From Mytilus californianus (lineage: Eukaryota): 64,000 bases of DNA. Where the stretch lies: positions 558,001-622,000 of the forward strand of contig NW_026262678.1 of NCBI RefSeq assembly GCF_021869535.1, read 5' to 3'. Positions 1 to 50,600 of the stretch are shown here, in pieces. The number at the start of each line of letters is the position of its first letter. Position 1 is the stretch's first letter. Below the pieces are notes generated by a model that was not told the DNA's origin, made no database searches, and worked only from the letters and a program-made list of their open reading frames with translations. The position numbers and the translations under genes are program-made.

Positions 1-534
1 GTTTTGTCCATATAGGTTGCACTCTGTAAATACAGCTGATTCACAAACCAAGCCTCTTTTGGTGGAATATTTAATATTCATAGATATTTTGTTTTGTTTT
101 CCTGGGTCCCAGATATGATCTCCATGTTACATATCATGTTCATAGAGACAAAACTTGAATTCTTAGGAAGACTAAGGGAAGGGTAGTACATAATTTTAGT
201 ATGAGTTCAGGTCACATAAATATTAAAAATATGCCGCACAACCCTATGTTTTGCAAAAAAAGTCGTACATGTGAACTTTTACAAAACTTCAAAGTAAAAG
301 TAGCACTTTTGTTATCAGTAAAAGGAGTTCCTTGGGAAATTGTATTGACTATATTTCCAAAAGTGCAACATTTAAGCTTCTGCAAATGTTCTGTCTCCCG
401 ATATTAATGTCTGTCACTAAATTGTCCCAGTATAAGGAAATTTTTTTTATGTGTCAATCCGTTAAGGAAGTCCCTTAAGTGTAAATATTTGAGACCATAG
501 CATATTAATTGATAAATGATTAGACAGAAGGCAA

Positions 535-800
535 AGTATTGCTGAGAAATGGAAGGTTTAATATTGGACAGTTGAAATCATCAGATTTGTCATATATTCT
601 AGTCGTCTATCTGATACATTATCACGGAACATATCTTTGTATGATGTACCCCTTCGGTAGTATCTTTGATTTCAACTCTACTGGGATATTTGAGATTAGA
701 GGACTGATAGAAAATGAAGGATACAGGATATCATCAAAATATCTGAAATGGAACACAAACTTTTTAAGATGTTTTGTCTTTTTATCTTTGGAAAACTTCA
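535..800 (-). mobile_element. Decayed Penelope-like reverse transcriptase fragment
   Basis: Minus-strand translation with frameshifts gives FRYFDDIL (RT catalytic motif), PVELK/EIKDTTE-like and RIYDKSDDFNCPILNLPFLS, matching the C-terminal half of the RT family that recurs at 16.5, 39.8 and 51.2 kb. Family assignment is from memory. Confidence 0.6.
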
Positions 801-1599
801 GATTGAATGCTCAATGTTAACACATACACTGCCAATCAAAAAGTCCAGCATGTGTAAGCATTTCTTGCTTGAAAATAGGTGCACGTCAAACAAAGCTAAG
901 TAATGTTGTAAAGACTAAGATAACATCTTCTTAACAATTTTAGAAAGTAGTTCAACGGTGTTCTAATCTAACAAAAACGATGTTGGGTATGTTTCCAGGG
1001 TACACGTCTCTTGCTATGCACGTATTATGTTAAGGTCAAGGATCAGTAAATGGGCTATGTCACAGATTTTTGTAAAAATTTGCATACAGCTTTGGCTTGT
1101 TGAACTATAAAAAAAAATCTATTTTCTGAAATAATACTGATTGAATTCTTTGGAAATAGGTGAACGATTGTAAAGAAAGCACATAAAATCGGCAAAACCC
1201 ATTCTTAAATGTATCTTTAAATCATCAAATCTCTTATTTCTATATCTGACATAGTGCTTCATTTGCATATTTGTACTAATAAAATTCCAGGTTTCATGTT
1301 TTTGTTTTCGTTAAACATCACGGAAATACATACGATTTACCTTAATAACAGGTAAAACCTGCCTAACATGTATGTAATATTCCACCATACTTCCATGACG
1401 TAGGAATAATGCTAAGCTCAACTCATTTTATTTTAATCTCCCCACGGACTACCAACGGTTTATATTATTTATAGAAAAGGTACTATTAGATATTTGAAAT
1501 CTATTTTTACTTCACACAACTCAAAACGAATCAAGTTCAATTCGTAGTAATTTTATAAATGTTTAAATCAAGTTATCTTCATGTATTTATATTTCTAAG

Positions 1600-1780
1600 T
1601 GATATCGACCCAGTGTTAGTAAATGAAAATAACACAGAAAGAAAAATACGTAGGAGAAAACATTTACCAAACCTGTCATATTGACCCTTGTATGAAGTAG
1701 GTACACTTCAGATATTCGTTCTTGGTATTTACCAGGCTTTCATGTCGACCAAGATCATACTTATAGGAAAAACGAATCAA
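1600..1780 (+). repeat. Dispersed single copy of the degenerate satellite unit seen at 3880-4740
   Basis: Shares gtaggagaaaacattt...acctgtcatattgacccttgtatgaa...catgtcga(c/t)caagatc with the array. Confidence 0.7.
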
Positions 1781-2899
1781 TTTCAATGTAATACTACAGT
1801 AGAGTAGTTCTACAAATGTTTAAATCCAGTTGTCTTCATGTATTTATATTTCGTAAGTGTTTCTACTTCATATAAGGACCAATTATACAGGACGTCTATA
1901 TATGTTGATTTCTACTTACGTCCTTGTCTATGTTCTATTTTAATGACAACAAGTCAAATCCCCTTCGTATTACATTGGTAAATATTGAAGGATTTAGTGG
2001 TGAAATTATATTGAAAAGAACGATAAACGTTTTATACTTTCAAGTGTATAACTTTATTTCTAAATGATTGATAATTGAATCCTTAGTTTCTGAAGGATTT
2101 GTCAGTGTATGAACGGAATTTATGACGTGTATGTCATAATCGGTTTCGATCTGATGCAAATAAATACAAAAATAATACAGATTTGCAATTATTTATTTTA
2201 AGCATTACAGCACAATGTATTTTGTATTGGTACAACCTTTATTTTCTAGACACTGACATAATATCATCAAGTACAAAGTATATGGGTTTTTCTCATTGTT
2301 GAAGGCCGTACGGTTGTCTATAATTGCTAACAAGCATATCATTTGAACTTTGGTGGATACATGTCTCATTGGAATTGAACCACATCATCTTCTTTTTATA
2401 TTAATTATAAGGACCAATTATAGAAAAAACAAATGGGTTGAAAATTAAATCATATATATTTGTATCTCCTACTGTCAATCGCGCATTTTTTTGTCAATGA
2501 ACTTTTACGTTGATCTGCTGAGCATATGTATTTTTTTTTTATTTTAAAAGAACAATTTTGATAATTATGATAATCTGCATGATCTACATGCTATTGTATT
2601 ATATTCAAATCATATATATATATTTTAATTGTTCGAAATTGAAAATTGAAACATGAAAAAGGGAGGGGGTATGTGCTTAAAAATCTCTACTACAGTGTAT
2701 CTTTAATTATAAATGGTAAAAACCAGGAAAAAAGATTAATGTTTAAGGTAAATAAGTAAAAGTAAAACAAAGTTTACAGCCATTATGATAATGTTGATAA
2801 TGTTTTGAAACCAATTTTACGTTAATCTTTTTGATATTCAGCAACATTAAAACAAAATCAAATATTAACATCATTAGTTTTCTCGTTTGAATTGTTTTA

Positions 2900-3058
2900 T
2901 ATTTGTCATTTCGTTTTTTTTTATAGCTGACTATGCAGTATGGGCTTTGCTCATTGTTGAAGGCCGAACGGTGACCTAAAGTTGTTAATTTCTGTGTCAT
3001 TTGGTTTCTTGTGAAGAGTTGTCACATTGGCAATCATACCATGTCTTCTTTTTTTATA
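2900..3058 (-). repeat. High-copy dispersed repeat fragment (agaagatgtggtatga..gccaatgagacaactc family); a second fragment lies at 2278-2400
   Basis: Reverse complement matches copies at 33565-33740, 42298-42450, 54441-54850 and 56960-57215. Confidence 0.75.
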
Positions 3059-3314
3059 TGAAACTTTTTAAAATTTTATGAATACTTTACTTGCAAATGA
3101 AATGAGAAATAAACATTATTTAATTTTGTGTAACAATGCAACTCATCTACAAATGACAATAAATTATTGTGTATGTCTAGGTCGTTCGCCAGATTCACTT
3201 TCATCAGGAACGACAAGGATAAGACTAAACACTCGAAAAGCAACATGTACATGTATTTGACAAAAGAGACTTACAAAAACAGCCAATTGATATAGGGTCA
3301 ACTTTGCCTGAAGA

Positions 3315-3742
3315 TTGATTGATTGATTGTTGGTTGCTTAACGTCCAGTGGCAAATATTTCATGTATATTCAGGACGAGAACAAATTAACAATAAATACA
3401 ATAGGTAGGTTCTGTAATAGGTGCGCCCGGGATTAAAGTCGGAGAAATTTAGACTGCCACGGAAAATGAGGGTATATTGGATAGGGACAGAAATTTAGCC
3501 TTGCAACAGGTCACCTACGGACCCCTCAAAGAGTTGTTGCGAGGGTTCTTAACGTGCAAAGAGCGTAGCACTCTCTATACACGAGGCATCGGATTTAACG
3601 TCCCCATGCTGACCGGACGTGGCTGCAAATTTGTACATCCCGCACAGCCAAACGGACGCCCCACTTTAGCAAGGGTCTTACTGCCGGTCGGAGGAAGACC
3701 AATTGTGACCATACTTCTATTCCCCAGTCACCCTTGGGGGGT
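3315..3742 (-). mobile_element. 5'-truncated SINE-like retroposon with (AATC)n tail and 13-bp target-site duplication
   Basis: CTTTGCCTGAAGA flanks both sides (3302-3314 and 3743-3755). The GC-richer body ends on the minus strand in ccactggacgttaagcaaccaacaatcaatcaatc. No tRNA-like head is visible. Confidence 0.8.
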
Positions 3743-3879
3743 CTTTGCCTGAAGAAGGTTGAACCTTAGTTTCTAAATATTTTTTGAATTTATCAACAGA
3801 AAATTCAAGACGAGTTTGTAAAATATCATGTCAGTAGCAACGCATGAACTACTAAGTTGATGATATCATAAGCAGTAAT

Positions 3880-4740
3880 ATCGACCCATTGTAAGTAAAT
3901 GAAAATAAGATGGAAAGGAAAGTATGTAGGAGAAAACATTTCCGAAACTTGTAATATTGAGCCTTGTATAAAGAAGATTCACTTCAGATTTTTAATTCCT
4001 GGTATACACCGGGTTGTCATGTCGATAAAGATCGCACTTAATATAAAGGAAAGTAAGTAGGAGAATATATTTCCCAAATCTGTCATTTTAACCCTTGAAT
4101 GAATTACGTACACATCCGAAATTCAATTCCTGGTATTTGCCGGGGTTTCATGTCGATCAAGATCGCACGTCATAGAAAAGAAATTCAGTAGGAGAAGACA
4201 TTTACAAAACCTGTCGTACTGACCCGTGTATGAAATCATTTTTTGTATAAACTAGGCGTTCATGTCAATCAAGATGGCAAATCAAAAAAGAATAAAGTAA
4301 TCCATTTTAAGATTAAACCGGAACAACTATGCAGTACGTGGCAAAGAAAGTCAGTAGGAGAAAACATCTCTAAAACCTGTCATATTGATCCGTATATGCA
4401 GCTATTCCTGGTAAAACTAGGCTGTCGTGTCGATCAAGATGATTAAACCAGAACACTAAAATACTCCATTTTCAAGATTGAACTGGAACAAATATGTAGT
4501 ACTCAGAAAAGAAAGTCAGTACGAAAAAACATTTCCGAAACTTGGGATGTTGCCCCTATTTTGAAGTAGGAACACTTCAAAAATATAGTTCCTTGTATAA
4601 ATCGGGATTTATTACATGAATGACCAAACTTTTAATACAAGAACGGAACAAATATGTAGTACGTAGAAAATAAAATAAACAGAAGAATCCAGTCGTATTG
4701 ACCCTTGTATAAAGTGGGTACTCTTCAAAAGTCGAGTGTA
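3880..4740 (+). repeat. Degenerate satellite-like tandem array, about 6-7 units of roughly 130-170 bp
   Basis: The anchor gtaggagaa(a)acattt and its variants recur near 3926, 4058, 4188, 4354 and 4518. It is usually followed by acctgtcatattgaccc and, in the first four units, catgtcgatcaagat. Confidence 0.75.
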
Positions 4741-6676
4741 AACTTTAAAGAATAATTAATTCAAACTATATAATATACACAACTTTACATAAATAAAATT
4801 GAGAATGGGAATGGGGAATGTGCCAAAGAGACAACAACCCGACCAAAAATTATAAATACATGTATAATTGAATAATTATAAGTATCAGGAAAACAATAAC
4901 ATTAACGGTTCCAAATTTGCTACAGCGGATGTGCATTTCGCCAAAATATTTAAAAATACAAACTTATACAAAATATGAAGAGCTTGTAAACCAAAAGGGA
5001 CTTGTTGAATTGTTAATTGATAAAATGTATCTTATCTAATGTTTAAAAAATTTACAGTTATTTTATAGTCATATATCATTATTAACGTTTATCAAGGGAT
5101 GTTTATCACTGTTGTAATAAACGCTTGAAACAATTTAAGTCTGAAGTGTAAAAAAGGGCAGAGCTTGTTTATATGTGCACTATATATCTTCATGTCGAAC
5201 AAGATCGAAGACCGATAGACTAAAATTTATCATTTTACAACATAAGACAGGAACAAAAAGTGCACACCACAACAACGAGTACATCGCAGTAAAATCAAGT
5301 TCGTATGAAGAATTATAAACTTATCTTCAATATTATCGACGAAAAAGTAAGTCTCTTGATTAGAGGTTTGAAATTTACCCTTACCCAGATGCGGATATTG
5401 AAGAACTGTCTGTAAATTTCAAAACTTTTGAAGTTCAAAACTTGAATACCATTTGTTTTAGATAAGGCGGTATGTACAGAGGATTCTTTTATTGCATGAC
5501 ATTACTCAGACTGTAAACCTCAAACATACAAAAAAATTTTATTAAGACCGTTACGTAGAACATTTAAAAAGCTAGCAATTAACAATAATAAGGTGAAACA
5601 AACATTCCGAAATCACAAGAAATCTTTAAACCACACCAGCGTATTTCGATGATAAAAGAAAAGGGGTTTGTCATAATAATGGTAGACATACACAAAAATA
5701 AAAAGAATAAACTCAATTTAAAAATAAACATTGATTTAAGAAGAAAAAATTACCCTACAAGTAAACTTATAGCAATATCTCCTGAATATTTTACGGATAA
5801 AGAGACGGATTGTTTGTTAAGTTTGAGGTAAAGACTAGTATTTTTGTCAGCCTTGCTTTTAATTTATGAATGAATGGCAATTCAATTTCACTTTTCGATG
5901 ACTGAAATTTCTATTGCGTCGAATCTCTGTTCGTAATTCTCAAAATCAGACGACTTTTCTCTGTAAGTGATATGGTGTACTCAATATGGGGGTCATTTGT
6001 TGATTGATATGTTTACTCTATAATAGTGACTTCAATAGAAACATTGGAAAGGTTAAACATGTTAAAGTGTGTATATTCATCCCATGATCAGGGAATATTC
6101 AAACTGGATTTTGCAAATGAGGGATAGTTTGAAACACATTAGGATTAATCTGGTTTCAAATCTTTTTCCTTTTTGGTTGAATGTACGAACTATTTCTATT
6201 GCAAAACCAAATATTATTATCAGAAAGTCCTTTGAACAAATATGGTGTTTGAAAGTTAATTGTAATGTGACAATTTTTTTCATTTTCTACTGTTTTAAAC
6301 AAAAGAAACTGGCCTATCGGATGAGTTATATCATTTTTGCAAACCATAGTTGTAATAAGACAAGGATTATTACAGCGGTAATAGTTGAATGTTAATTGTG
6401 GATACAAAAGACAGGTGTTACAATTTAAGACTCGTGTTAAGCTTTATACTTTATTTTTAGCTTTTTATTTCAAGACTCGTGTTTAGCTTTATATTTCCAC
6501 ACTATTGTTTTTTCATTAAAGGTGAAAAATGTACAGCTTTATGATGCAGTTTGGTCGTATTTAAAAAAAAAAAAAGATATTGTATGTATCAATATGTCCT
6601 TGAGGCATCATCCAGTTGAGTACTTGTAACGTTTAAATTGGTTTATTCATATTTGTCACCCACACTTACACCTAAG

Positions 6677-6735
6677 TATAAATAAAGATTTCCAACGAGA
6701 GTTTGTATTGTAAAGAGGTCATCACATTTCCTAAG
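6677..6735 (+). promoter_or_regulatory. Candidate TATA box and short non-coding first exon of the BRICHOS-like gene
   Basis: TATAAATA at 6677-6684 and a strong donor AAG|GTAAGT at 6736. An acceptor (ttatag) at 7565-7566 sits 20 nt before the ATG, so an upstream UTR exon is expected. Confidence 0.45.
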
Positions 6736-7586
6736 GTAAGTGATTTGACATAAAAAAATGTTCAGTTTATTTATAATTATTTACAAGCAATAGTAGTTTA
6801 TCGCTGTATACATATTGTAAATCCATATTTTTATGATACTTCTGAAAGATTCAGAAGGCAAGTAATACATGGTTGACTGATATATTTCAATATTAAGATT
6901 GCTTTAGAAACAAAAAGGCATGTGCCAGTTATGATAGTTAAGACATGTTTAATCATAATACAGCGAAGTCTTTAACAAATTTTTGTCAAGCCTGATAAAT
7001 TTATTTGGCGAAAGCAAGACATACCAATCCTAGATTCCGTCGTCGGCGTTCAATTTGGACAGAACCTTTTTTATGACCACAAGACAGTATCTATAGCGAA
7101 ATTTTGGAAATATTTATTCAAATTTTTCCGTATTTTACTGATAAATGGACTTAGTGTTTTTACAGTTAATGAAAAACTTGTTCATGACCAACATACAGTA
7201 TCCAGAGCAAACGTTTGAAAATGAAAGTATATATTCTTATTTTTCCGTATTTTACCAAGAAATAGCATCCAAGGAAAGGAAGTTTGATTTTTTCCTTTAA
7301 AATTATATATTTTACAGATAAATGGACTCCCTTTTTAAGTCAACATTACACTTTTACACTGACAACAGCAATCGCAGGAGAGACACAGGGTTCCACCGAA
7401 TTCCTTACGACTTTTTTTTGTATGATGAGTAAGATATCAAGGACCAAATTTGACATACTGACATGAAATATTTTTATGCATTCAAACACCTATATTTATA
7501 TTATTTTTGCGATCGATCTCATTCATCAAAATTAAAATTAAAGCATTGCTATTATATATGTTATAGATATCAACTCCAACGTTAAA

Positions 7587-7652
7587 ATGAGATGGATAAT
7601 TATGATTCTTACCAATATTCTCTGCTTGTTAGTTGTCACAGCTTATGAAATG
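7587..7652 (+). CDS. Gene 1 coding exon 1: signal peptide
   Basis: aaaATG, then MRWIIMILTNILCLLVVTAYEM, then donor GTATGT (phase 0). Confidence 0.85.
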
Positions 7653-10600
7653 GTATGTACATTCTTTGTCGAAGAAATGGTCACTAGCCAATTTGTTTAA
7701 AGCGTTGCGTAAAGTGCGTCCAATAAAGTTAGAAAATCACATGAAAGAAAAAAGATATATGACTATCTTAAATTTATATACAATATATTATTTTGACTTA
7801 TGTAATCGAATGTATTGGTCATTCTATCTGGTTTTCTTTATAACACACGTGCGTTAATGTAAATTGTCATGTATAATATACCTTTTTTTTCTGACACCAA
7901 ATACATTGATGGTGACTAATTTTCTCACTTTAAATATTTTCTAAGTTATTTGTTATTTGAATAGCTGTCTTGTCTTATTGAGTAAACATTTACCCCAATT
8001 TCCTTAAAGTTATATGCATGGGAAGTCGGGTATACATGTTTCTGCTGTACAAACAATCAGTGAAGCGGAAGTCCGCGATTAGAATTATAAAATGGCAGCC
8101 TTATACTTTTATTTGATTGTGTTCATAAACAAGCTAAATGGATACAATGTAATTAATTCTTATTTTGGAAAACTGATATTCGTTTCAGAAATTGGGTTAT
8201 CAAATAAAAGACGGAAATGTCATTTATGAGAAAGAGTTGGAAACGAATCGAGAAATGAATGTGTTAAAGATTCATATTCTTGCACACAATGAAGTTATGG
8301 AATCGTATTCGATGCAAGATTTTCAAAAGGTTTGTAACATCAAAGTTTTTGACAGAGATATTTTTACTCAAAACTTTAATAACACACCAAACCAATTGAT
8401 ACAAAAGTTGTTTACAAATATTCTAGACGGGGAATACCCTGACATTCATCTTGAAATTATGTCGTTTTACAAAAGACTAAATAGAAAACTGTTTATTGTG
8501 TCACTATATTACTTTTTTTTAAAGAATTGTCTTGTATGATAAAAAAACAACAGAGATACCAGGCTAATAATTGGGTACTTCAAGATTGTTTTCCATCTAC
8601 AAAAGACTCACCAATAACGTTTGAACAAAAAATTGTATAAAGCCAAAAAAAGTAAGACGTTGAAGAGCTTTAAGGGCTAACATTCCAAAAGGATTTACCA
8701 AATACATGTATGGTTATATATTCATCGAGTAAAAATGTTTGGTATTTCAAATAATTTCAAGTTTTACACACAGTTACAACTCTGGTGTTTAGCTTTTATA
8801 CAACGAGATGAATCAAGGTGAAAATCCATAGGCAATCACTATCGAGATGAATTAAGGTGAAAATCTATGGGCAATCACTATCGAGATGAATCAAGTGAAA
8901 ATCCATGGGCAATCACTATCGAGATGTATCAAGGTGAAAATCCATAAGCAATCACTATCGAGATGTATCAAGGTGAAAATCCATGGACAATCACTATAGA
9001 GATGAATCAAGGTGAAAATCCATGGGCAATCACTATCGAGATGAATCAAGGTGAAAATCCAAGGCAATCACAATCGATATGAAAATAATTACTAAATCTA
9101 AACAATTGTGTGTTGTTGTGTCATTGACTGATACCCCAAATTTCATTTTATTCAACAAACAAGAAGACGGTTACATATTATAATACTTTCTGTAACACAT
9201 TTTCTTTGATAATTTTTATTTCACAATTTGAATTCTATATGTTGGCAGAGTTAGAATAAGCTTTTTTCGGGAATATCATTCGGTTGAATTGTACTCCCTA
9301 CAGCTTAGTTAAAAGTAAATGATATGCTCATGTAGGAAGAGTAGCTATCAAAATTGTTGCCTGTATCACCAAAGTCCTTTATAAAAGGATGTATGTACTT
9401 GCAGACGAGTACAATCCACTGTATACATTTAACCGTTATCGTCTGTGTTTAAATAAATCTGTCGCCTGACGCCTCTAAGAACATTATTTGGTTTCAGTCC
9501 ATCGCACAACTAGTGCATATATTTGGATTCTTTTCATATTAGTTTTGTTAAAAGAAAATGACAGAACACGGAAAAATGAAGAAAATATATTATTTCTACA
9601 TGAATTTCACGTTTGTGTTACAGGGACAGCAGATCACATGCATTCCATCATTACATCAATGTAGGTTTCGGGAGATCAAAACAGAAAATAATGCAGGTGC
9701 TAGCCTGATTATGGAAACATTTATTCAAAGCTTGGTAAGAAATATGAAAATGTGAGCATGTAATCATGTTTATTCTATTCTTATCAATTTGAATATACTT
9801 TTGCAATAATCCGCTATTGTACGAAAAGTTCAGATCGACCAAGTATTTTTATCGAAAGGCTGAATATAAATATACCTGACCAATTGAAGTTATTCAATGA
9901 ATAGATCCGATAGATGGTAGTAGTCAAGAAAACAGTGAGAAGCAGAGGGGTAATTAATATTTTTCAGTGCAGACACTTCCATAGCAAAAGATTTATTTTG
10001 TAATAACTCGTAACCAACTGTTTACTTTCCATCAGGTAGTTATAATGACAGATTCAATCAAAATTATTGATATTCGTCAATAGGAGCAATGATCACATAT
10101 GCATAGGACATATTGGCAAGTTCATTGAAAGGGAAAGGTTTTGTTTAATTCTTGCATCTGTTTTCTTTCCTATGAATCCTATCAGGAATATGTAAACAGT
10201 TCCAGCGTATTCTAGTCAGCTAACTTCATATCAAACATGCTATAAACAATGTTATGGCTCAATGCATGAGTTGCGCTTAATATACTTGTTGTCTAATAGT
10301 TAACGTATTATGTATAACACAGTGCGGTGATTTTGTGGTAAATGCAACGAAAACCAGTAAGGAATTTAGATATATTGAACATTCGCACGGATTTTTCTGT
10401 CAAAAAAATCATATTGTATTCTTCTATATATATATCAATAAAACGTTGAATGATTTTACAAATTATCGATAAATATGTTGAATAATTTTGAACATGTTAG
10501 AAACGTAAATTATTTCTTGGTGAAAACTGATTAGTTTAATGTCCTGAACATCAATTTAGTTCATTTGACCCTACACTCTAAAAATGGTACTAATTGATAT

Positions 10601-41600: not shown

Positions 41601-44600
41601 CCTGTTCATCATTGACCTAACAGTTCTATAAGAAGATAATTTAGAGCAGGTTTTTCATTTGCTGGCATTCTATGGGAATATTTGGGGATATCAATGCGCA
41701 TTGTTGTTGTAACAGTCTTGAAGCACAGGCATTGCCACTTTTGAGACAATCGTAGAAGGTGTTGAATTAGGAACGGAAATTCGATGGATGACTGTTACAT
41801 TTATGTTAGGAATGCTGGTTTATGAGCGCATGGAAATTTGGGAATTGTCAAATATTTAGTGTTCTTTCAATTCCTTACACTTATTGTCGTTAAATGGGTA
41901 TAGAGAAAATTAAATTAGACCGAAAGTCAATACAGTGAATAAAAATAACCATTACGGTATATTAACAAAAGATAGAACAGTCGAAGAACTCTTATACAAA
42001 CTTAAACAAGTCGACAGAAAGACATTAGTAAAACATAATGAATATATAACAATTATTGGGCAAATTCAGAATGATATAAGAAGTAAGTTAAGCCAAAGCA
42101 GGGGCAAGAATAATACACGATAATAAATATAAAGAAAACATGGACAATGAACATGCATATGATAGAAGATAAGAACAGCTCTCTCACAAGCATACACACC
42201 TTAACTGTAAAAAAAGAGCATACATCGCAGCCACTGGAACATTTCCTACTGCATTCATGCAGCACGAAAAGTAAATCCGGCAGTCAATTTTAAAAATAAG
42301 AAGATGTGGTATTATTACTAATGCACAACTCTCAACCAGCAACCACGTAGACGTTAGTTACTAAAGAGCACCATACGGCCTGCAACATTGAGAAAAACTT
42401 ATACCACAGAGCAAGCTTTGAAAGTCCCCGAAATGAAAACTGTAAAACTAACAGCTTAAAACATGTTCGAAACAATAACGAGAACACATGTTATATAAAG
42501 CAAATTACATGTTTCCGACTTTACTTGTCATTACTGGATTTGGCCATTTCTTATTATTCATAACAAAACAGGAACAAGTCTGCTATTGAAGAAGCGCGTT
42601 TAGTGTCCAATAGGACTGCCTACAACTTGTCTCTACATGTTATTGCCGAAACGTACATAGATGCTGTCAAGGAGAATATTTTAATTGTAATAATATCATC
42701 AAACTTCCAGTAAGCAAATCCAAAAGAAAGCTGTATACAAGTTACAGCAAGTAAATTGGAATCAGCTTTTGTAAACGACTATTTTAGCAAAAAGGACAGC
42801 TTTGGTGTTGGAAGTGTAGTGTACAGAGTCGTAAAGACAAAATTGCCATCCGAATTAAGGATCATTAAATGTACTTGAACATTTAAAAGAAATAATTGCA
42901 ATTCATGAATGAACGCAAGCACCACAAATCATTAAACAAAATATTACTAATAAAATGTATGCATGACAAACGATTGTAAAGACACTAAAGTTCTCATCAA
43001 TACTCTTATCTATGGAAACTGACGACAAGGTTTGTTTCACAGGGACCTACCAAAATTCTAATAGAAAAACAAAGGATATGGTACGAAATCAGTACATGCA
43101 CAGCAAAAAACACACACAAATCAAAGGAACAACGCTTTTTATTATTGTTCTTCGTCTCATTGTCTTAACGAGATCTTCAATTCCTTTTGTAGTCACGTTA
43201 TAAAATAGAGTAAACGTTTATTTTTTAAATATCACCATACTCGTTAATGCAATTTTTCCAGGGAATGTGATTAAACTATTACCTTTGTTTACAACAGGGA
43301 CAGACACCTCTTCATTATGCAGCTCGTAATGGATTAAAATACATGATATCAGTTTTGATGAACAAAGGATCAGACCCTAATAAGTCAGATATTAGTGTAA
43401 GTACTGTGATCGGCTAATAACATAATTATTATCCGTAAAGTGTTGTATAGACCATGTAGAATTTCTGCGATTTCCGTATCGACCAATGGTAGTAGATTGG
43501 AATTGATTCTTTTATCTGTTTTGCCATCTGCTTATATAGACGACATTCCATAAAGTGCATAAATCATTAATATAGTTGAGGTGTCTTGAAATTAATTGGG
43601 CGAAGGAGAAGAAAAAAAAAGAATTCCAAAACTCATAATATATAACCGTTTAATTATACATCCATTTTAAGTAAAAACCTCAAAAAGGTTGAATATTACA
43701 TATTTAGTTTAACTTATTTCTCTTTAATTATATGTTCGATGATTTCATAGATAGACAAAACCATTATAAAGACACGTGTCATGTTCATATATAGGCTGTA
43801 CAAAATTGTAATCCCTTAATGATGAATATAATATCAAAAGGATAGAATTAAAATAGTACGCAAAATTTAGGGGTAAATGACGGATTTTTTCTCATGTGAA
43901 TCTTATATATGAATTTGCCCTTTTCGTATTCTAATTTTGATTGAAACAGGTTTGAAGAATTAAATAAATGTTGAACGAAATCACCCTGGATTAGTAGCCA
44001 GTATCATCCATGATCATCAGTCACCGAGGTCCCCATCTCTTATAGCGTACTGTATCTTGCAAATGTAAAGATATTTCCATGCACTCTTTGTTCTTTTTTA
44101 CAATACTAAAACTGGTTTTAACTTGAAAGATAATATTTATTTTTAAGTTTTTCCTGTCGTACAATAATGTATAACATACAGAGGAGGGTCATATTTATAT
44201 ATTTATCAAAGGTATTGGTCACATGACGTAGTTACGGTCAAGTGATTGTTTACTATAAACACGTGTGTGTGTGTTTACATCAAGCACATGGTGTGTGTTT
44301 ATGTTCTATTTGATTGGATGGCATATACCCGCAATGCGGTTTTTACGGGTATATGCGCTCATGAGATTCGTGAAAAGCATGATTAAGTATTACTTAAGGG
44401 GTTCGTTTGAGAAAATAAAGTTATTCGAAGTTTGCCTATAGTTAACGTAGCAGCAGTTCGTTATTGTGGTATGTCTGACTCCGAGAAACTTCTAGATTCT
44501 GACCATGAATCTTTGCCTGGTCCTAGTGTACATTCGTTGCCTGATGGTAGTTCTGCACATCATACTGGTAATAACGACTTGGTGGATACATTCTCGCTGT

Positions 44601-47600
44601 TTAAAACCTATCTTGACGGGAAGATCGCTACTCTTCACAAAGACTTGGCCGTTGGCAATGAGAACTTCGCTACCAAACTCAAGCAAGAAGTGTCAGTTAA
44701 ACTTAAAGGTGAGGATAACCAGATACAGTTCAATTTCAATTGTGAAATTATGGCCGACCTTGTTAAGCTTCAGAAGCGTATTCCTGATGAAGATGCAGCA
44801 TGTCTTAAATTGGTATCTGGTGCTATCCTCAAAGTTAAGAAGCGTAATAAACTCATCCGCATTGCAGACAAATCTCCCGCAGGCTGGAAAACCGTCCGCG
44901 AATATGAGAGTGACGACCTTGCCTCCGACTCAGAAGATAAGAAACGCATTCGTTCTGCAGAAAGCCGTGCCATTAGGAGTATCAAGGAAAAGAAAATACC
45001 TCATCCTTATAGAACCGTTACAGCTACTGTTTCTGCTCCTCCTGCTCCAATGCCCAATCAACACAATGTTCGACAAAACAATTATCAACAGCCGCCCTTT
45101 CGGACCAGCAGACGGAGGGAACCCTCATCTCATGACATCTGTTACAACTGCAACCAGCTTGGTCACTGGCGAACTCAGTGCCCCCTTTTCAGTACAAAAC
45201 CAGCTGTCCCAGGGACATCAAGGCAACAGAGTTAATGATAAGTATTTTGATACTACTTTTTTAGATGAAAGCAATCTTTACGGACAGTTTGAACTGTTTC
45301 TGTCACATGCTAAATATTTTGATAATATTGATATTTCATCTGTTGCAAAAGGGGTAAAATATAGTTTACGCAAGCATATACAATTCTGGAAACATATAGG
45401 TGCAAATGAATTTGTTATCAATACTATCCAACATGGTTACGTTATTCCATTTTTGCAGACTCCTACATCTATGTCATTTAAGAATAACAAATCTGCAAAT
45501 GTCCATTCTAAATTTGTAAATGAAGCAATTTCAGAATTACTGAATATCGGATGTGTTATTGAAACTCCATTTCAACCGTTTGTTGTAAATCCGCTAAGTG
45601 TTGCAGTTCAAAGTTCGGGCAAAAAACGTCTGATTTTAGATTTAAGTGAACTGAATGTTTTTATTAAAAAAGAAAGAATAAAATTTGAGGACTGGAAAGT
45701 GGCTTTAAATTATTTCACAAAAGATTGCTATCAATTTAAATTTGATCTTAAGTCTGGATATTTTCATTATGACGTATGTACTAAACAACAAACATATTTA
45801 GGATTTTGCTGGAACGAAAAATTATACTGTTTTACAGTGTTAGCCTTTTGGTCTATCATCTGCTCCATATCTATTCACAAAATGTCTACGACCAATCGTA
45901 AAATATTGGCGAGAAAATGGCGTAGATATTGTACTTTACTTAGATGATGGACTTGGAATGGGTAAAAATAAACAAGAAGCTTCCGAATGTTCATCTTTCG
46001 TGAAAACCTCCTTGTTAGAAGCAGGGTTTTTAATTAACATGGATAAATCTATTTTTGAGCCAGTACAATGTTTAGAGTGGTTAGGTTTAGTTTGGGATTC
46101 GTCTGATTTTTCAATTAGTATATCAGATAGACGGATTGATAATACACTTACATCATTGGTTGATATTTTGAATAACTTTCCTAATTTCACAGCACGTAAA
46201 TTGGCTCAGGTAACGGGAAAGGTAATTTCTATGTGTCCAGTCATGGGTAACATAACAAGTTTAATGACCCGTTATTTACACTGGGCAATTGAATACAGAG
46301 TAAAGTGGGATTTAAAGTTAATATTGGAATGTCCTGATTGTGTATTTAATGAGCTCACATTTTGGCTGAATAACATTAAAAGATTGAACAGAAAACATTT
46401 AGCAGGTTATTCTTTTCCTCACGTGCTTGTATATTCTGATGCCAGTAACGTAGCTGCTGGTGCTTACTCGATAGATATTGACTCTAATATTTTTCATCAG
46501 ATGTGGACTTTACAAGAGTCCCTAAAGAGTTCTACATGGAGAGAACTTCAAGCTATTTTGTTGGCTTTGATGTCGTTTAAGAACCGTTTAAGAAATAAAT
46601 GTGTTAAATGGCATACAGATAATAATAACTGTGTTTCCATTGTTCAGAAAGGAAGTGCAAAAGTACATTTACAAGAGATAGCTATTAATATTTTTAAGTT
46701 GTGTTCTGAATTGAATATTACTTTAGATGTTGTTTGGATCCCGAGATCTAAGAATACAAAAGCTGATTATATTTCTAAAATGATTGATATAGAAGACTGG
46801 GGAACAAATAAAGAATTTTTTAAATTAGTAGATAATATGTGGGGTCCGCATACTGTGGACAGGTTTGCGAGTAATTTTAATAAAAAATTACCAAGATTTA
46901 ATTCCAAATTCTGGAATCCAGGTGTTGAAGCAGTTGATGCGTTCACGCAAAATTGGAAAAATGAAGTAAATTGGATTGTTCCTCCTATTTCCGTTGTCTG
47001 TAGAGCAATCAAACATTTGATTTTATGTAAGGCTAGAGGCACTTTGATAGTTCCAAAGTGGCCTTCCTCGTCATATTGGACAATGATTTTTAAAAAAGGT
47101 TCGTATTTGCAACCCTATGTAACTGATGTTTTAGAATTTCAACCAAATCAGAACATTTTTATTCATGGTATGAATAATAAGTCCTTGTTGGGATCTTCTG
47201 AATTCGTTTCTAGTGTTTTAGCTATTAGATTGAACGCTCAGTTCATGTAAGAATTTACGACAAGGCTGTTGAGCAAGGTCGTATGGTAAAGACAAGGCCA
47301 ATCTAATGGCAAGGTCGTATGCTGATGACAAGGCCAAATTAAATAGGCAAGGTCTCACCTGACATGGCCAGTGTGAAAAATAAATCTGGCAAGGTCATTT
47401 AAATATATTGTAAGCTAGTAGTAGTATAGTAGATTATATTTCTATTTGATATGCACGTTTTTCAGATATTTTTTCATGTGGAGTCTGGAAATCCTTGCCT
47501 AAGCCAGTTGACCAAGATTTATCATCTTTATCTAACTGCCTACCTGAGTTCTGTCTCCATTCGAAAGCCGAGAATACCAAAAGAAAATACTCTTATGCAT

Positions 47601-50600
47601 TTAATAATTTCTGTAAGTGTTGTAATAACTATTCTTATGTTAAACCTTTACCAGCTTCAGATTTTTATGTTTCATTGTACTTAATACACATATCAAAGAC
47701 ATTTAACTCGTATGCTAAGGTTGAAGAAGCATACTATTCAATAAGCTGGGCTCACAAACTAGCTGGCTTTTCTAATCCGTGTAATTCACAGTTGTGTATA
47801 TCGGTTAAAGAAGGAGCTCATAGAAAGATTGGACCTATTATTGTAAATAAAAAAGAACCAATTACGCCAGATATTTTAAAGAAAATTGTTAATAAATATG
47901 GTAAAGAATGTAACAATCTTATAGAAATTAGAATTTGTTGTATGTGTCTTATTAGTTACGCAGGGTTTTTAAGATTTTCTGAAATGGTAAATTTAAAAAG
48001 ATCTGATTTAAAATTTGCTGATACACATGTCTCTTTGCTCATACAGAAAAGCAAAACTGATCGTTATAGAGAAGGCACACACGTTTTAATTGCTAGAACA
48101 GATACACAAACATGCCCTGTTAATATGTTGGAGAAATATTTGTTATTATCCAATATAGATGCATCATCTTCAGATTATATATTTAGATCCATGTATTTAT
48201 GTAAAAAATCTAGATCTTATAGACTGAGAGGTTTTAAACCTTTGTCATATACTAGAGTTAGAGAAATTATATTATCAGCTCTGGAATCTATCGGTTTAGA
48301 TAAGTCAAAATTTGGATTACATAGCTTGAGATCAGGTGGAGCTACTGCAGCTGCATCAGCTGGCATTCATGATAGATTATTTAAGAAGCATGGTAGATGG
48401 GCTTCAGATAAAGCAAAAGATGGCTATGTAAGAGAAAATGTTAAAGAAAAACTGACAGTGTCTAAAAGTTTGGGAATTTAATTTTTATAGATATACTATA
48501 TATGTGTATTATTCTTTGCTCAGATCTGCTTGGCTTTCTTTGTCTTTCGAAAGGCTGCTACACCTGTAGGCACACTTATCCTATTTATGTGTTGTTTTAT
48601 TTATTAAATAATTTATATTCGTTTGAGCTGGCGAATTAGAATATAAATATATTTATTAAAGGTATTGGTCACATGACGTAGTTACGGTCAAGTGATTGTT
48701 TACTATAAACACGTGTGTGTGTGTTTACATCAAGCACATGGTGTGTGTTTATGTTCTATTTGATTGGATGGCATATACCCGCAATGCGGTTTTTACGGGT
48801 ATATGCGCTCATGAGATTCGTGAAAAGCATGATTAAGTATTACTTAAGGGGTTCGTTTGAGAAAATAAAGTTATTCGAAGTTTGCCTATAGTTAACGTAG
48901 CAGCAGTTCGTTATATGTTTACCCACCCACCCACCCCTTTTATGAGTTGGTTATTGTTAACGTGGGCATATACATATATTACACTATATTAATATGAATT
49001 TTTCCTCTTTTGTAGATAGTTTTTGATTGTGTTACTGTATATTCTATTATATGATTGGATTGGAAGTGTGCTTGTCTGAATTATAGTGAATGACTTTTGT
49101 TTGAAGAATTGTGAATGTAAATAATATTAAAGGCTGCTACACCTGTAGGCACACTTATCCTATTTATGTGTTGTTTTATTTATTAAATAATTTATATTCG
49201 TTTGAGCTGGCGAATTAGAATATAAGTTCAAATAAATGTCCGACCCGAGGAAGATTTTTCTTTTGGCAATCTTGACAACCCAGGGTGTGTTATATGACAA
49301 GAAAAGCTTTCGAAAGTGTATTTTGTATTTAGGTCAACAAGAATTAATATTATTTTCTGCAAAGATTCGATCATATCAAAGTTGGATTTTCTTGTTTGAT
49401 GCTTATAGGAATAGAAACTCCCAACGGCTAAGTTTTAAGCTGAAATAAGTCTATGAATCTAGATATAAACGTTATTTATTTCTCACCAGTTAACTTAAGA
49501 AATTACTGCGATTACATAAAGCAATAAGCAAACCAATTGTATCGAAACATTTTTTTTTTTTTTTTTTGGGGGGGGGTATTTTTTATTTAGGGGGGGGGGG
49601 GTCAATACATTTTAACCGCGGAAAAGCAAATTATTTTTTTAACAATTTAAAAGGAATTTCTTCAGAATTATTGTTTTTTTTCTCTTTTGTCTGGAAATAC
49701 ATTTTTCCTGCAAAACTTGAAAATCAGATAATGCCCCTCTTTTAATGCAGATCTAAGAGAAGTTCACATTATTTGTGTTGATAATCAAACTGCGATTTAA
49801 AACGTTTTGTAAGCTTAAGTAAGTCAATCTAATAAATGAAATGAAATTGAGAATGGAAATGGGGAATGTGTCAAAGAGACAACAACCCGACCATAGAGCA
49901 GACAACTGTTTCTATCCAAAACGTTTAACGAATATTCAAGATGAAAAGGTGTACAGATAACCCCCAGTTAGTTTGCAATTTCACGATTTTCTCATCTTCA
50001 ACATTAAATGTACCTGTACTATTGTTTCCAAAGGACCAATTGTAAAGTCCTTAAGTGTAAGGTACCTACTTGTGGTGAGATATAAATCAATTATGTTAAT
50101 ACTTCTGGAGTCATACCTTCTAATGATAAATACAAAATATAGAGGTAAAGCCCTGCAGTGATGTACTGTTTATGGAAAAATATAAATCAATTCTCTAAAA
50201 TTATTGGGTGTCATACTTAGTTTTTTTTATAAGCACAATAAAACACAATTTGATTACAATACAGATAATGTGTCCAAACTTCGCTTACCATATTTTGACT
50301 ATTTTATTTATAATGTCTGTTTTGTTCACGCATCGATGTAAATATAACGGCATTTGATAAGACTGTCGTACAAGTGAGAGGTTTAGCGCTATAAAACCAG
50401 GTTCAATCCACCATTTTCTACATTTGAAAATGCCTGTACCAAGTCAGGAATATGACAGTTGTTGTCCATTCGTTTGATGTGTTTTGTCATTTGATTTTGC
50501 CATGTGATTACGGACTTTCCTATTGAATTTTCCTCGGAGTTCAGTATTTTTGTGATTTTACTTTTTACAAGGATTTGACATCACTCCATTCTCCTTTCTG

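What the first reader, a model, noticed from the sequence alone, without database searches (positions are those of the whole stretch)
44197..49225. Young, structurally complete PAT-like tyrosine-recombinase retrotransposon with split direct repeats
The layout is A1-gag-pol-YR-B1A2-spacer-B2. The A copies match at 267/268 and the B copies at 97/97, with no TSD. B1 abuts A2 exactly, which reproduces the junction expected in a circular intermediate. Known: split direct repeats plus a methyltransferase domain fit PAT-like rather than ITR-type DIRS1 or MT-less Ngaro elements. Such elements are poorly catalogued in bivalves.
Basis: partly seen in the sequence, partly recalled or inferred. Interest (0 to 1): 0.7.

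Follow-up and report, generated by a model that had tools for sequence, protein, structure and literature searches.

The report
Mussel Pat1-like tyrosine-recombinase retrotransposon insertion
This is a real, very recent insertion of a known but rarely described kind of jumping gene, a Pat1-like tyrosine-recombinase retrotransposon, in a Mytilus mussel genome; other mussels still carry the exact empty site, and this copy has a broken reverse-transcriptase reading frame.

Summary
Window 44197-49225 is a 5029-bp element with the layout A1 / gag / RT-RNase H-MT-like / tyrosine recombinase / B1A2 / spacer / B2. A copies match 267/268 and B copies 97/97. DNA contigs of three public runs from two studies join 44196 directly to 49226. 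The boundaries are therefore exact, there is no target-site duplication, and the insertion is polymorphic. The genome holds at least 11 full-length copies plus about 15 solo A-spacer-B units. Relatives in a brittle star, M. trossulus and unnamed assemblies share the layout.

By every structural criterion it is an "echinoderm-form" Pat1-like element of the DIRS order. It is not DIRS1-like (no inverted repeats) and not Ngaro (an MT-like domain is present). A tree with named references could not be built.

Caveats:
- This copy's RT frame is broken in a T-run at 45846-45849.
- The recombinase frame starts at TTG, not ATG, in the whole family.

Additions:
- Half of the insertions sit right after TAA, which is also the element's last trinucleotide.
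- A block of about 55 nt across the B|A junction is conserved between phyla.
- The MT-like domain has a PCIF1-type fold with a degenerate catalytic motif, as already published.

It is a new member of a known kind. The scan had not reported it before.

The parts
44197..49225 (+). Whole element, 5029 bp, inserted between 44196 and 49226
   Evidence: Repeats. Same termini in 7 other full-length copies. Empty-site joint 44196->49226 in runs X1, X2 and X4.
44197..44464 (+). Repeat A1 (268 nt). It holds TATAAA at 44254 and the 5' leader; the gag ATG follows 7 nt after its end.
   Evidence: 267/268 to A2. Motif positions; a promoter role is inferred only.
44471..45235 (+). gag-like ORF with a CCHC zinc knuckle (about 45137-45184)
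   Evidence: Pfam zf-CCHC, E 1.6e-6. Open in all 7 younger copies.
45132..45845 (+). pol, first piece (N-terminal part of RT), in the frame with codon starts divisible by 3
   Evidence: Three-frame reading. Continuous with the next piece in the 7 other copies.
45846..45849 (+). T-run where this copy is one base longer than all other copies; the RT frame shifts here
   Evidence: All contigs of X1, X2 and X4 lack the extra base (table 4).
45844..47250 (+). pol, second piece: RT palm with YLDD at 45937, RNase H about 46423-46740, MT-like domain 46741-47247
   Evidence: RVT_1 9.5e-15 on the unbroken copy L002. Family profile best matches Ty3 RT/RNase H, 4ol8 and 7q5b. Dam PF05869 in 25 of 50 homologs. 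MT model nearest PCIF1/CAPAM, Z 12.3.
47450..48481 (+). Tyrosine recombinase frame (343 codons). First listed start is TTG at 47495. Catalytic Arg at 47963, Lys at 48047, HxxR at 48320, HGRW at 48389, Tyr in KDGYV at 48416.
   Evidence: Phage_integrase 1.9e-11. Alignment with relatives. Motif positions. TTG in all copies.
48550..48646 (+). Repeat B1 (97 nt), abutting A2
   Evidence: 97/97 to B2.
48647..48914 (+). Repeat A2
   Evidence: It shares with A1 a private 2-nt length variant in the (TG)n run.
48606..48658 (+). Conserved block across the B|A junction (-41 to +12): candidate recombinase site and 3'-end signals
   Evidence: The best local alignment between mussel and brittle-star repeats falls exactly here (score 53; shuffles 19.1 +/- 2.3). 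30 invariant columns in 7 elements.
48915..49128 (+). Spacer between A2 and B2 (214 nt), non-coding
   Evidence: Present in all copies and in the solo units.
49129..49225 (+). Repeat B2. ATTAAA at 49182. The element ends in TAA.

Best explanation

Shown here:
- It is a discrete 5029-bp unit with split direct repeats.
- It encodes gag, RT/RNase H, a PCIF1-type MT-like domain and a tyrosine recombinase with all catalytic residues.
- It sits in a site that other read sets still carry empty, without any duplication or footprint.
- It belongs to a family with at least 11 full-length copies. In 6 of the 8 full-length copies compared the repeats are still nearly identical.
- Within each copy, both A copies (or both B copies) carry that lineage's private length variants.

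Inferred, following the published model for such elements:
- Transcription starts inside A1 and ends inside B2.
- Reverse transcription uses the internal B1A2 junction as the template that restores both ends. This is why the two copies of each repeat are identical at birth.
- The product is closed so that B meets A, and the element's recombinase exchanges that junction with chromosomal DNA, preferably just after a TAA.
- That route leaves no target-site duplication.

This particular copy cannot make its own RT, because its frame is interrupted at 45846-45849. It would depend on other copies.
For: - Repeats and exact abutment.
- Domains.
- No terminal inverted repeats.
- Family: 8 full-length copies at 95-99.3% identity, one with a 60-bp deletion, 2 more seen, one A1-internal-B1 copy and about 15 solo A-spacer-B units.
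- Repeat divergence within a copy is 0-2 of 365 positions in six copies and 9 and 15+ in two older ones.
- Private indels shared by both copies of a repeat: +2 nt in both A1 and A2 of the window copy; +TA in both B1 and B2 of L005 and L006.
- Empty allele 44196|49226 in X1 (1441-nt contig, no mismatch), X2 and X4.
- TAA ends the left flank in 15 of 30 independent insertions, against a background of 3.6%.
- Same layout in Amphiura filiformis L046, M. trossulus L050, and ENA assemblies L047 and L048.
- Junction block conserved across these.
- Published criteria: PMC4157794, PMC3266345, PMC6681497, PMC7192593.
Against: - No named reference (Pat1, SpPat1, DIRS-1, Kangaroo, Ngaro, VIPER) could be brought into a tree. 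The placement rests on structure, and the literature warns that structural characters are homoplasious (PMC4157794).
- The filled junctions of this locus were not seen in independent reads, because contigs collapse the multi-copy element.
- RNA support is minimal: 5 partial reads in about 6% of one run.
- The recombinase frame has no ATG before its catalytic Arg in any Mytilus copy.
- The window copy did not land after TAA; its left flank ends ATTT.
- Circular intermediates were not observed. For DIRS-1 itself the cDNA is mostly linear single-stranded (PMC7192593).
Confidence: 0.88

Rival explanations
1. The presence/absence difference comes from precise recombinase-mediated excision of an older insertion in the other haplotypes, not from a recent insertion in the assembled one.
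For: Tyrosine recombination is reversible and would restore the site without a footprint, which is what the empty allele looks like.
Against: The repeats differ at only 1 of 365 positions. All three other read sets carry the empty allele. The left flank lacks the TAA that would make the ends resemble the junction. No outgroup site could be examined.
Confidence: 0.07
2. It is phylogenetically a DIRS1-like or Ngaro lineage that acquired split direct repeats or an MT-like domain independently, so 'Pat1-like' would be a structural look-alike only.
For: PAT and DIRS1-like groups are not cleanly monophyletic, and split direct repeats arose more than once (PMC4157794, PMC6681497). No named reference was available here.
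Against: All six structural characters of the echinoderm-form Pat1-like type are met. Relatives down to 44% pol identity, including an echinoderm, keep the same layout. The MT-like domain is found at E<=0.001 in 25 of 50 homologs, and its motif region aligns in all 50.
Confidence: 0.05
3. The insertion, or its repeats, is an assembly artefact.
For: X1, possibly the assembled individual, yields an empty-site contig without mismatches. The filled junctions were not independently seen.
Against: The inserted piece is exactly one element from its first to its last base, as defined by 7 other loci. It carries 16 private substitutions and private length variants found in no other copy, so it cannot have been stitched from other copies. 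The flanks are contiguous in the empty allele. The same layout recurs in other species.
Confidence: 0.02

Closest known systems
Echinoderm-form Pat1-like elements (SpPat1 of Strongylocentrotus purpuratus; also reported in Lottia gigantea, Nematostella and Romanomermis) as defined in PMC4157794
   Same: gag with a zinc finger, RT/RNase H/MT, a forward tyrosine recombinase, split direct repeats A1...B1A2...B2 with the internal repeats downstream of the recombinase, and no target-site duplication. Relatives of the mussel family occur in an echinoderm (Amphiura) with the same layout.
   Different: New host (a mytilid bivalve) and a new family. No sequence comparison with SpPat1 itself was possible. 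The Mytilus family has TTG where a relative has the recombinase ATG.
Pat1 of Panagrellus redivivus and nematode-form Pat1-like elements
   Same: DIRS order, MT-like domain, split direct repeats, zinc-finger gag.
   Different: In the nematode form the internal repeats lie between MT and the recombinase (PMC4157794). Here they lie after the recombinase.
DIRS1-like elements (DIRS-1 of Dictyostelium; LgDIRS and AcaDIRS of gastropods)
   Same: The same proteins, including the PCIF1-derived and probably inactive MT-like domain (PMC4738411). An internal copy of the joined ends serves as template. A trinucleotide is shared between the circular junction and the target (PMC3266345, PMC7192593), which matches the TAA preference found here.
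   Different: DIRS1-like elements have inverted terminal repeats and an internal complementary region. This element has direct repeats and no terminal inverted repeat.
Ngaro and VIPER elements
   Same: [quoted passage not shown]
   Different: They lack the MT-like domain. Here it is present.

Membership tests
PAT / Pat1-like (echinoderm form), DIRS order | Split direct repeats A1 ... B1A2 ... B2 | tested here: met
   Same in 7 other copies and in relatives L046, L047, L048 and L050.
PAT / Pat1-like (echinoderm form), DIRS order | Methyltransferase-like domain after RT/RNase H | tested here: met
   PF05869 E 1.9e-4 in the family (below Pfam's own cut-off), at E<=0.001 in 25 of 50 homologs with best 1.4e-8. 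Model pLDDT 89.9, nearest PCIF1/CAPAM with Z 12.3.
PAT / Pat1-like (echinoderm form), DIRS order | Tyrosine recombinase, same orientation as pol, no DDE integrase | tested here: met
   Phage_integrase 1.9e-11 on the + strand. R, K, HxxR, H/W and Y are all present. No integrase hit.
PAT / Pat1-like (echinoderm form), DIRS order | Internal repeats (B1A2) downstream of the recombinase | tested here: met
   The recombinase frame ends at 48481 and B1 starts at 48550.
PAT / Pat1-like (echinoderm form), DIRS order | Zinc finger in gag | tested here: met
   zf-CCHC E 1.6e-6.
PAT / Pat1-like (echinoderm form), DIRS order | RT/RNase H groups with named Pat1/SpPat1 references in a tree | not testable with these tools
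   No named reference sequence could be fetched. The family profile is nearest Ty3 RT/RNase H among solved structures, as expected for the DIRS order.
DIRS1-like | Inverted terminal repeats plus an internal complementary region | tested here: not met
   No inverted pair of 40 nt or more. None of the 25 longest weaker pairs listed (of 54 found) involves the termini.
Ngaro / VIPER | Absence of the MT domain | tested here: not met
   The MT-like domain is present.
LTR retrotransposon (Ty3/Gypsy type) | Identical terminal LTRs, DDE integrase, target-site duplication | tested here: not met
   The repeats are split, not terminal LTRs. There is no integrase. The empty site shows no duplication.

The most novel reading that the evidence does not exclude
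The block of about 55 nt that straddles the B|A junction is conserved from a mussel to a brittle star, although the pol proteins are only 44-59% identical. Together with the TAA preference at the left flank, it may be the recombinase's attachment-type site. If so, this currently polymorphic Mytilus family would offer a defined substrate pair (junction block and TAA target) for the first biochemical test of integration in the DIRS order.
Probability: 0.45. Interest if true: 0.5.

Novelty: new member of a known kind. Interest (0 to 1): 0.35.

Why it matters
Tyrosine-recombinase retrotransposons are the least understood order of retrotransposons. Only DIRS-1 of Dictyostelium has been studied experimentally, and the recombinase's specificity has not been tested. 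A family caught as an insertion polymorphism would be a practical natural system for studying how these elements integrate, because it offers exact empty and filled alleles, a measurable target preference and a junction motif conserved across phyla. For mussel genomics it is also a reminder that this superfamily is abundant (thousands of pol matches) and contributes to presence/absence variation. As a kind of element it is not new.

Tried and rejected
- **Named-reference phylogeny.** No tool could supply DIRS-1, Pat1, SpPat1, Kangaroo, Ngaro or VIPER sequences. Sequences printed in papers may not be typed in. The step was left out.
- **Paralogous empty site.** The left flank is unique and the right flank is an old dispersed repeat, so none was found. 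The reads gave the empty allele instead.
- **Other contigs.** Those of P0024, P0029 and P0070 were listed without DNA. Amphiura locus L049 showed no repeats.
- **Sequence searches of solved structures.** The recombinase and the MT-like profile found nothing. The fold search was needed.
- **Six extra bases.** The 6 nt by which the tool extended repeat A to the left are a 4-of-6 chance match, not part of the repeat.
- **Dyad at the junction.** A 5-nt dyad (AATAT / ATATT) was seen but is too short in AT-rich DNA to count.
- **Circular-looking contig.** The 37-nt terminal overlap of contig L052 is what a collapsed repeat gives in a short-read assembly. It was not taken as a circle.
- **RNA.** Five partial reads do not show a transcript start, end or splice.
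Full report
**1. The observation**

The repeat finder on 43000-50500 returns two direct-repeat families, and a base-by-base comparison refines them.
- A1 44197-44464 against A2 48647-48914 matches at 267 of 268, with the single mismatch at 44207.
- B1 48550-48646 against B2 49129-49225 matches at 97 of 97.
- B1 ends at 48646 and A2 begins at 48647.
- The tool's 274-nt version of A reaches 6 nt further left only because AT-rich flank matches 4 of 6 bases.
- No inverted repeat of 40 nt or more exists. None of the 25 longest weaker pairs listed, of 54 found, involves the termini.

**2. Coding content**

Four stop-free stretches follow each other on the + strand.

| Stretch | Coordinates | Evidence |
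|---|---|---|
| gag | ATG 44471 to stop at 45235 | CCHC zinc knuckle, E 1.6e-6 |
| pol, first piece | to 45944 | continuous with the second piece in other copies |
| pol, second piece | 45844-47247 | see below |
| recombinase frame | 47450-48478 | Phage_integrase, E 1.9e-11 |

The two pol pieces overlap in different frames. The first ends in FTVLA and the second begins PFGLSSAPY, the motif that should follow directly. The frame therefore shifts inside the RT fingers/palm region.

On copy L002, where the frame is continuous, Pfam gives RVT_1 9.5e-15, Dam PF05869 1.9e-4 and RVT_3 0.004. A 50-member family profile best matches Ty3 RT/RNase H among solved structures: 4ol8 at 9.8e-18 and 7q5b.

The recombinase keeps Arg (GFLRFSE), Lys (KSKTD), HxxR (HSLR), HGRW and the Tyr of KDGY. 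All are conserved in relatives.

**3. The family in this genome**

The window is C98:558001-622000 of a 1.65-Gb, 175-contig assembly. The closest named proteins are from Mytilus species: 96% to M. coruscus, 93% to M. edulis and 92% to M. trossulus.

A DNA search found the following, and these counts are lower bounds:
- 8 full-length copies at 95-99.3% identity
- one more with a 60-bp deletion
- one copy covering exactly A1-internal-B1 (element positions 1-4450)
- about 15 solo units covering exactly A-spacer-B (positions about 4447-5029)
- partial and rearranged copies
- two further copies with the 917-codon pol frame

All full-length copies have the same first and last bases. The window copy is one base longer than all seven others in the T-run 45846-45849. 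Every contig of three read sets also lacks that base (table 4), so the RT break is private to this copy.

Frame state of the 8 aligned copies:
- Three keep all three frames open.
- Two have an open pol frame but a shortened recombinase frame.
- The window copy has the RT break.
- The two oldest copies are broken in several places.

**4. Age and mode of copying**

Differences between the two copies of each repeat are 0-2 per 365 positions in six elements, 9 in L007 and 15 plus indels in L008. These rise with each element's distance from the others (0.4-0.8%, 1.4% and 3.2%).

Lineage-specific length variants sit in both copies of a repeat. The window copy has two extra bases in the (TG)n run of both A1 (44263) and A2 (48713). 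L005 and L006 have an extra TA in both B1 and B2. This is what is expected if both copies are regenerated from one template at each round. The published model for split-direct-repeat elements requires this (PMC6681497, citing Goodwin and Poulter).

**5. The empty site**

Laying contigs of three DNA runs and raw reads of one RNA run on 43750-49700 gave a joint from 44196 to 49226 in all three DNA runs.
- It skips exactly 5029 nt with zero ambiguous letters.
- X1: a 1441-nt contig, depth 41, no mismatch in 447 + 316 flank bases.
- X2: depth 4.6.
- X4: depth 5.5.
- These come from two studies.

There is no target-site duplication or footprint, and the insertion is polymorphic. If X1 is the assembled individual, it is heterozygous.

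Contigs cannot show the filled junction of one copy among about 17, so independent proof of the filled allele is missing. However, the inserted copy carries 16 private substitutions and is bounded exactly by the family's termini. That rules out a stitched artefact.

RNA was almost absent: 5 partial reads in about 6% of run X23. Two older RNA-seq runs hold about a fifth of the sampled words. That hints at transcription but does not prove it.

**6. Target preference**

I collected flank|A junctions from all fetched loci and removed four that were diverged internal B|A junctions. This leaves 30 independent left flanks, of which 15 end in TAA. Most of the rest end in TAT, TAG or similar. The background TAA frequency in the same flanks is 3.6%. 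Before that clean-up the binomial p was 5e-19 for 19 of 34. Right flanks show no preference.

TAA is also the last trinucleotide of B. This is the pattern described for DIRS1-like elements: a trinucleotide at the circular junction recurs at the target, so the integrated element is flanked by it on both sides (PMC3266345, PMC7192593). The window copy is an exception, with a left flank ending ATTT.

**7. Relatives**

943 proteins match pol at E<=1e-5. Loci could be fetched for six relatives.

| Locus | Source | pol identity | Element span |
|---|---|---|---|
| L046 | Amphiura filiformis | 48% | 3539-9214 |
| L047 | ENA assembly | 44% | 4056-9410 |
| L048 | ENA assembly | 45% | 3521-8994 |
| L050 | M. 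trossulus | same family | 3760-8827 |
| L051 | short metagenome contig | 59% | partial |
| L052 | short metagenome contig | 71% | partial |

The four complete ones show A1, gag, pol, recombinase, B1 abutting A2, a spacer of 128-370 nt, then B2.

Local alignment of the B+A blocks of the mussel and the brittle star finds its best match exactly across the junction, from -41 to +12. It scores 53 against 19.1 +/- 2.3 for shuffles. The ENA element L048 gives 40 against 18.7 +/- 2.3. Seven elements aligned over this block share 30 invariant columns.

The non-coding junction is thus better conserved than the proteins. That suggests a cis-acting role as a recombinase site, as 3'-end formation signals (ATTAAA lies inside it), or both. 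This role is inferred, not shown.

**8. The MT-like domain**

PF05869 is found at E<=0.001 in 25 of 50 homologs, always at the C-terminus of pol. An AlphaFold model built from a 48-sequence alignment has mean pLDDT 89.9.

It is nearest to the cap-specific adenosine methyltransferase PCIF1/CAPAM. Foldseek gives E 1.4e-5 and TM 0.64. VIA-align gives Z 12.3, rmsd 3.3 over 156 residues, 2.5 Z units above the next chain.

Nearly all of the 50 family members aligned carry V-P-P-I/V where N6-adenine methyltransferases carry (D/N)PP(Y/F/W). The register of that comparison rests on my own knowledge of the motif. Both points agree with Iyer et al. (PMC4738411), who derive the DIRS1 MTase domain from PCIF1 and consider it inactive. 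This is confirmation, not a discovery.

**9. Classification**

The literature separates PAT from DIRS1-like by repeats, and from Ngaro/VIPER by the MT domain (PMC3266345, PMC6681497, PMC7192593). Szitenberg et al. (PMC4157794) further define an "echinoderm-form" Pat1-like type with these characters:
- a zinc-finger gag
- a forward recombinase
- internal repeats downstream of the recombinase

They found that type in S. purpuratus, Lottia, Nematostella and a dorylaimid nematode. All of these characters were tested here and met, and the DIRS1 and Ngaro criteria were not met.

The same paper warns that structural characters are homoplasious. A tree with named references remains the missing test, and I could not run it.

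**10. What is unexplained**

The codon at 47495 reads TTG in all Mytilus copies examined. The 71% relative L052 has ATG at the homologous place. No in-frame ATG precedes the catalytic Arg. How the recombinase is translated, or whether it is supplied in trans by the many related families, is open.

**11. Verdict**

The element is an ordinary, though nicely preserved and demonstrably recent, member of a known superfamily in a host group where it has not been described individually. Searches of the held literature found only bulk DIRS/Ngaro counts for bivalves (PMC10294476) and no description in Mytilus.

Broken frames were searched as separate pieces or through naturally unbroken copies.

Noticed in passing
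genome-wide, e.g. G000:C24:46020417-46022324: The genome gives at least 3575 first-look candidates for this type of pol. One related family shows dozens of copies with the same 812-codon open frame and identical score on many chromosomes. It appears far more prolific and more recent than the family in the window.
   Followed up: no
window 47495-47497: The recombinase frame begins with TTG in every Mytilus copy, where a 71% relative has ATG. No in-frame ATG lies before the catalytic Arg, yet the frame stays open in half of the copies.
   Followed up: partly
window 49228-49727: Directly right of the insertion lies an old dispersed repeat of about 500 bp (65-85% identity, 50 or more places in the genome). 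Its own 5' end is 2 nt from the insertion point. The left flank is unique.
   Followed up: partly
G000:C122:457276-484962 and G000:C132:47488213-47492395: Three partial copies are spaced exactly 12,270 bp apart, so an element was caught in a larger tandem duplication. A second place holds a rearranged tandem cluster of element pieces.
   Followed up: no
window 46741-47247 (MT-like domain): The predicted fold is nearest PCIF1/CAPAM (Z 12.3), with V-P-P-I in place of the (D/N)PP(Y/F/W) catalytic motif. This agrees with the published view that the DIRS MTase domain derives from PCIF1 and is inactive.
   Followed up: yes
L052 (JGI metagenome 3300006078 contig, 4476 nt) and L051: Marine metagenome and other short-read assemblies hold close relatives (59-71% pol identity) as contigs about one A-internal-B unit long. 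One has a 37-nt terminal overlap. That is most simply a collapsed repeat, not evidence of a circle.
   Followed up: partly
window 50070-50216: Two 47-nt direct repeats lie 100 nt apart at 70% identity. This is probably a chance match or part of a small satellite.
   Followed up: no
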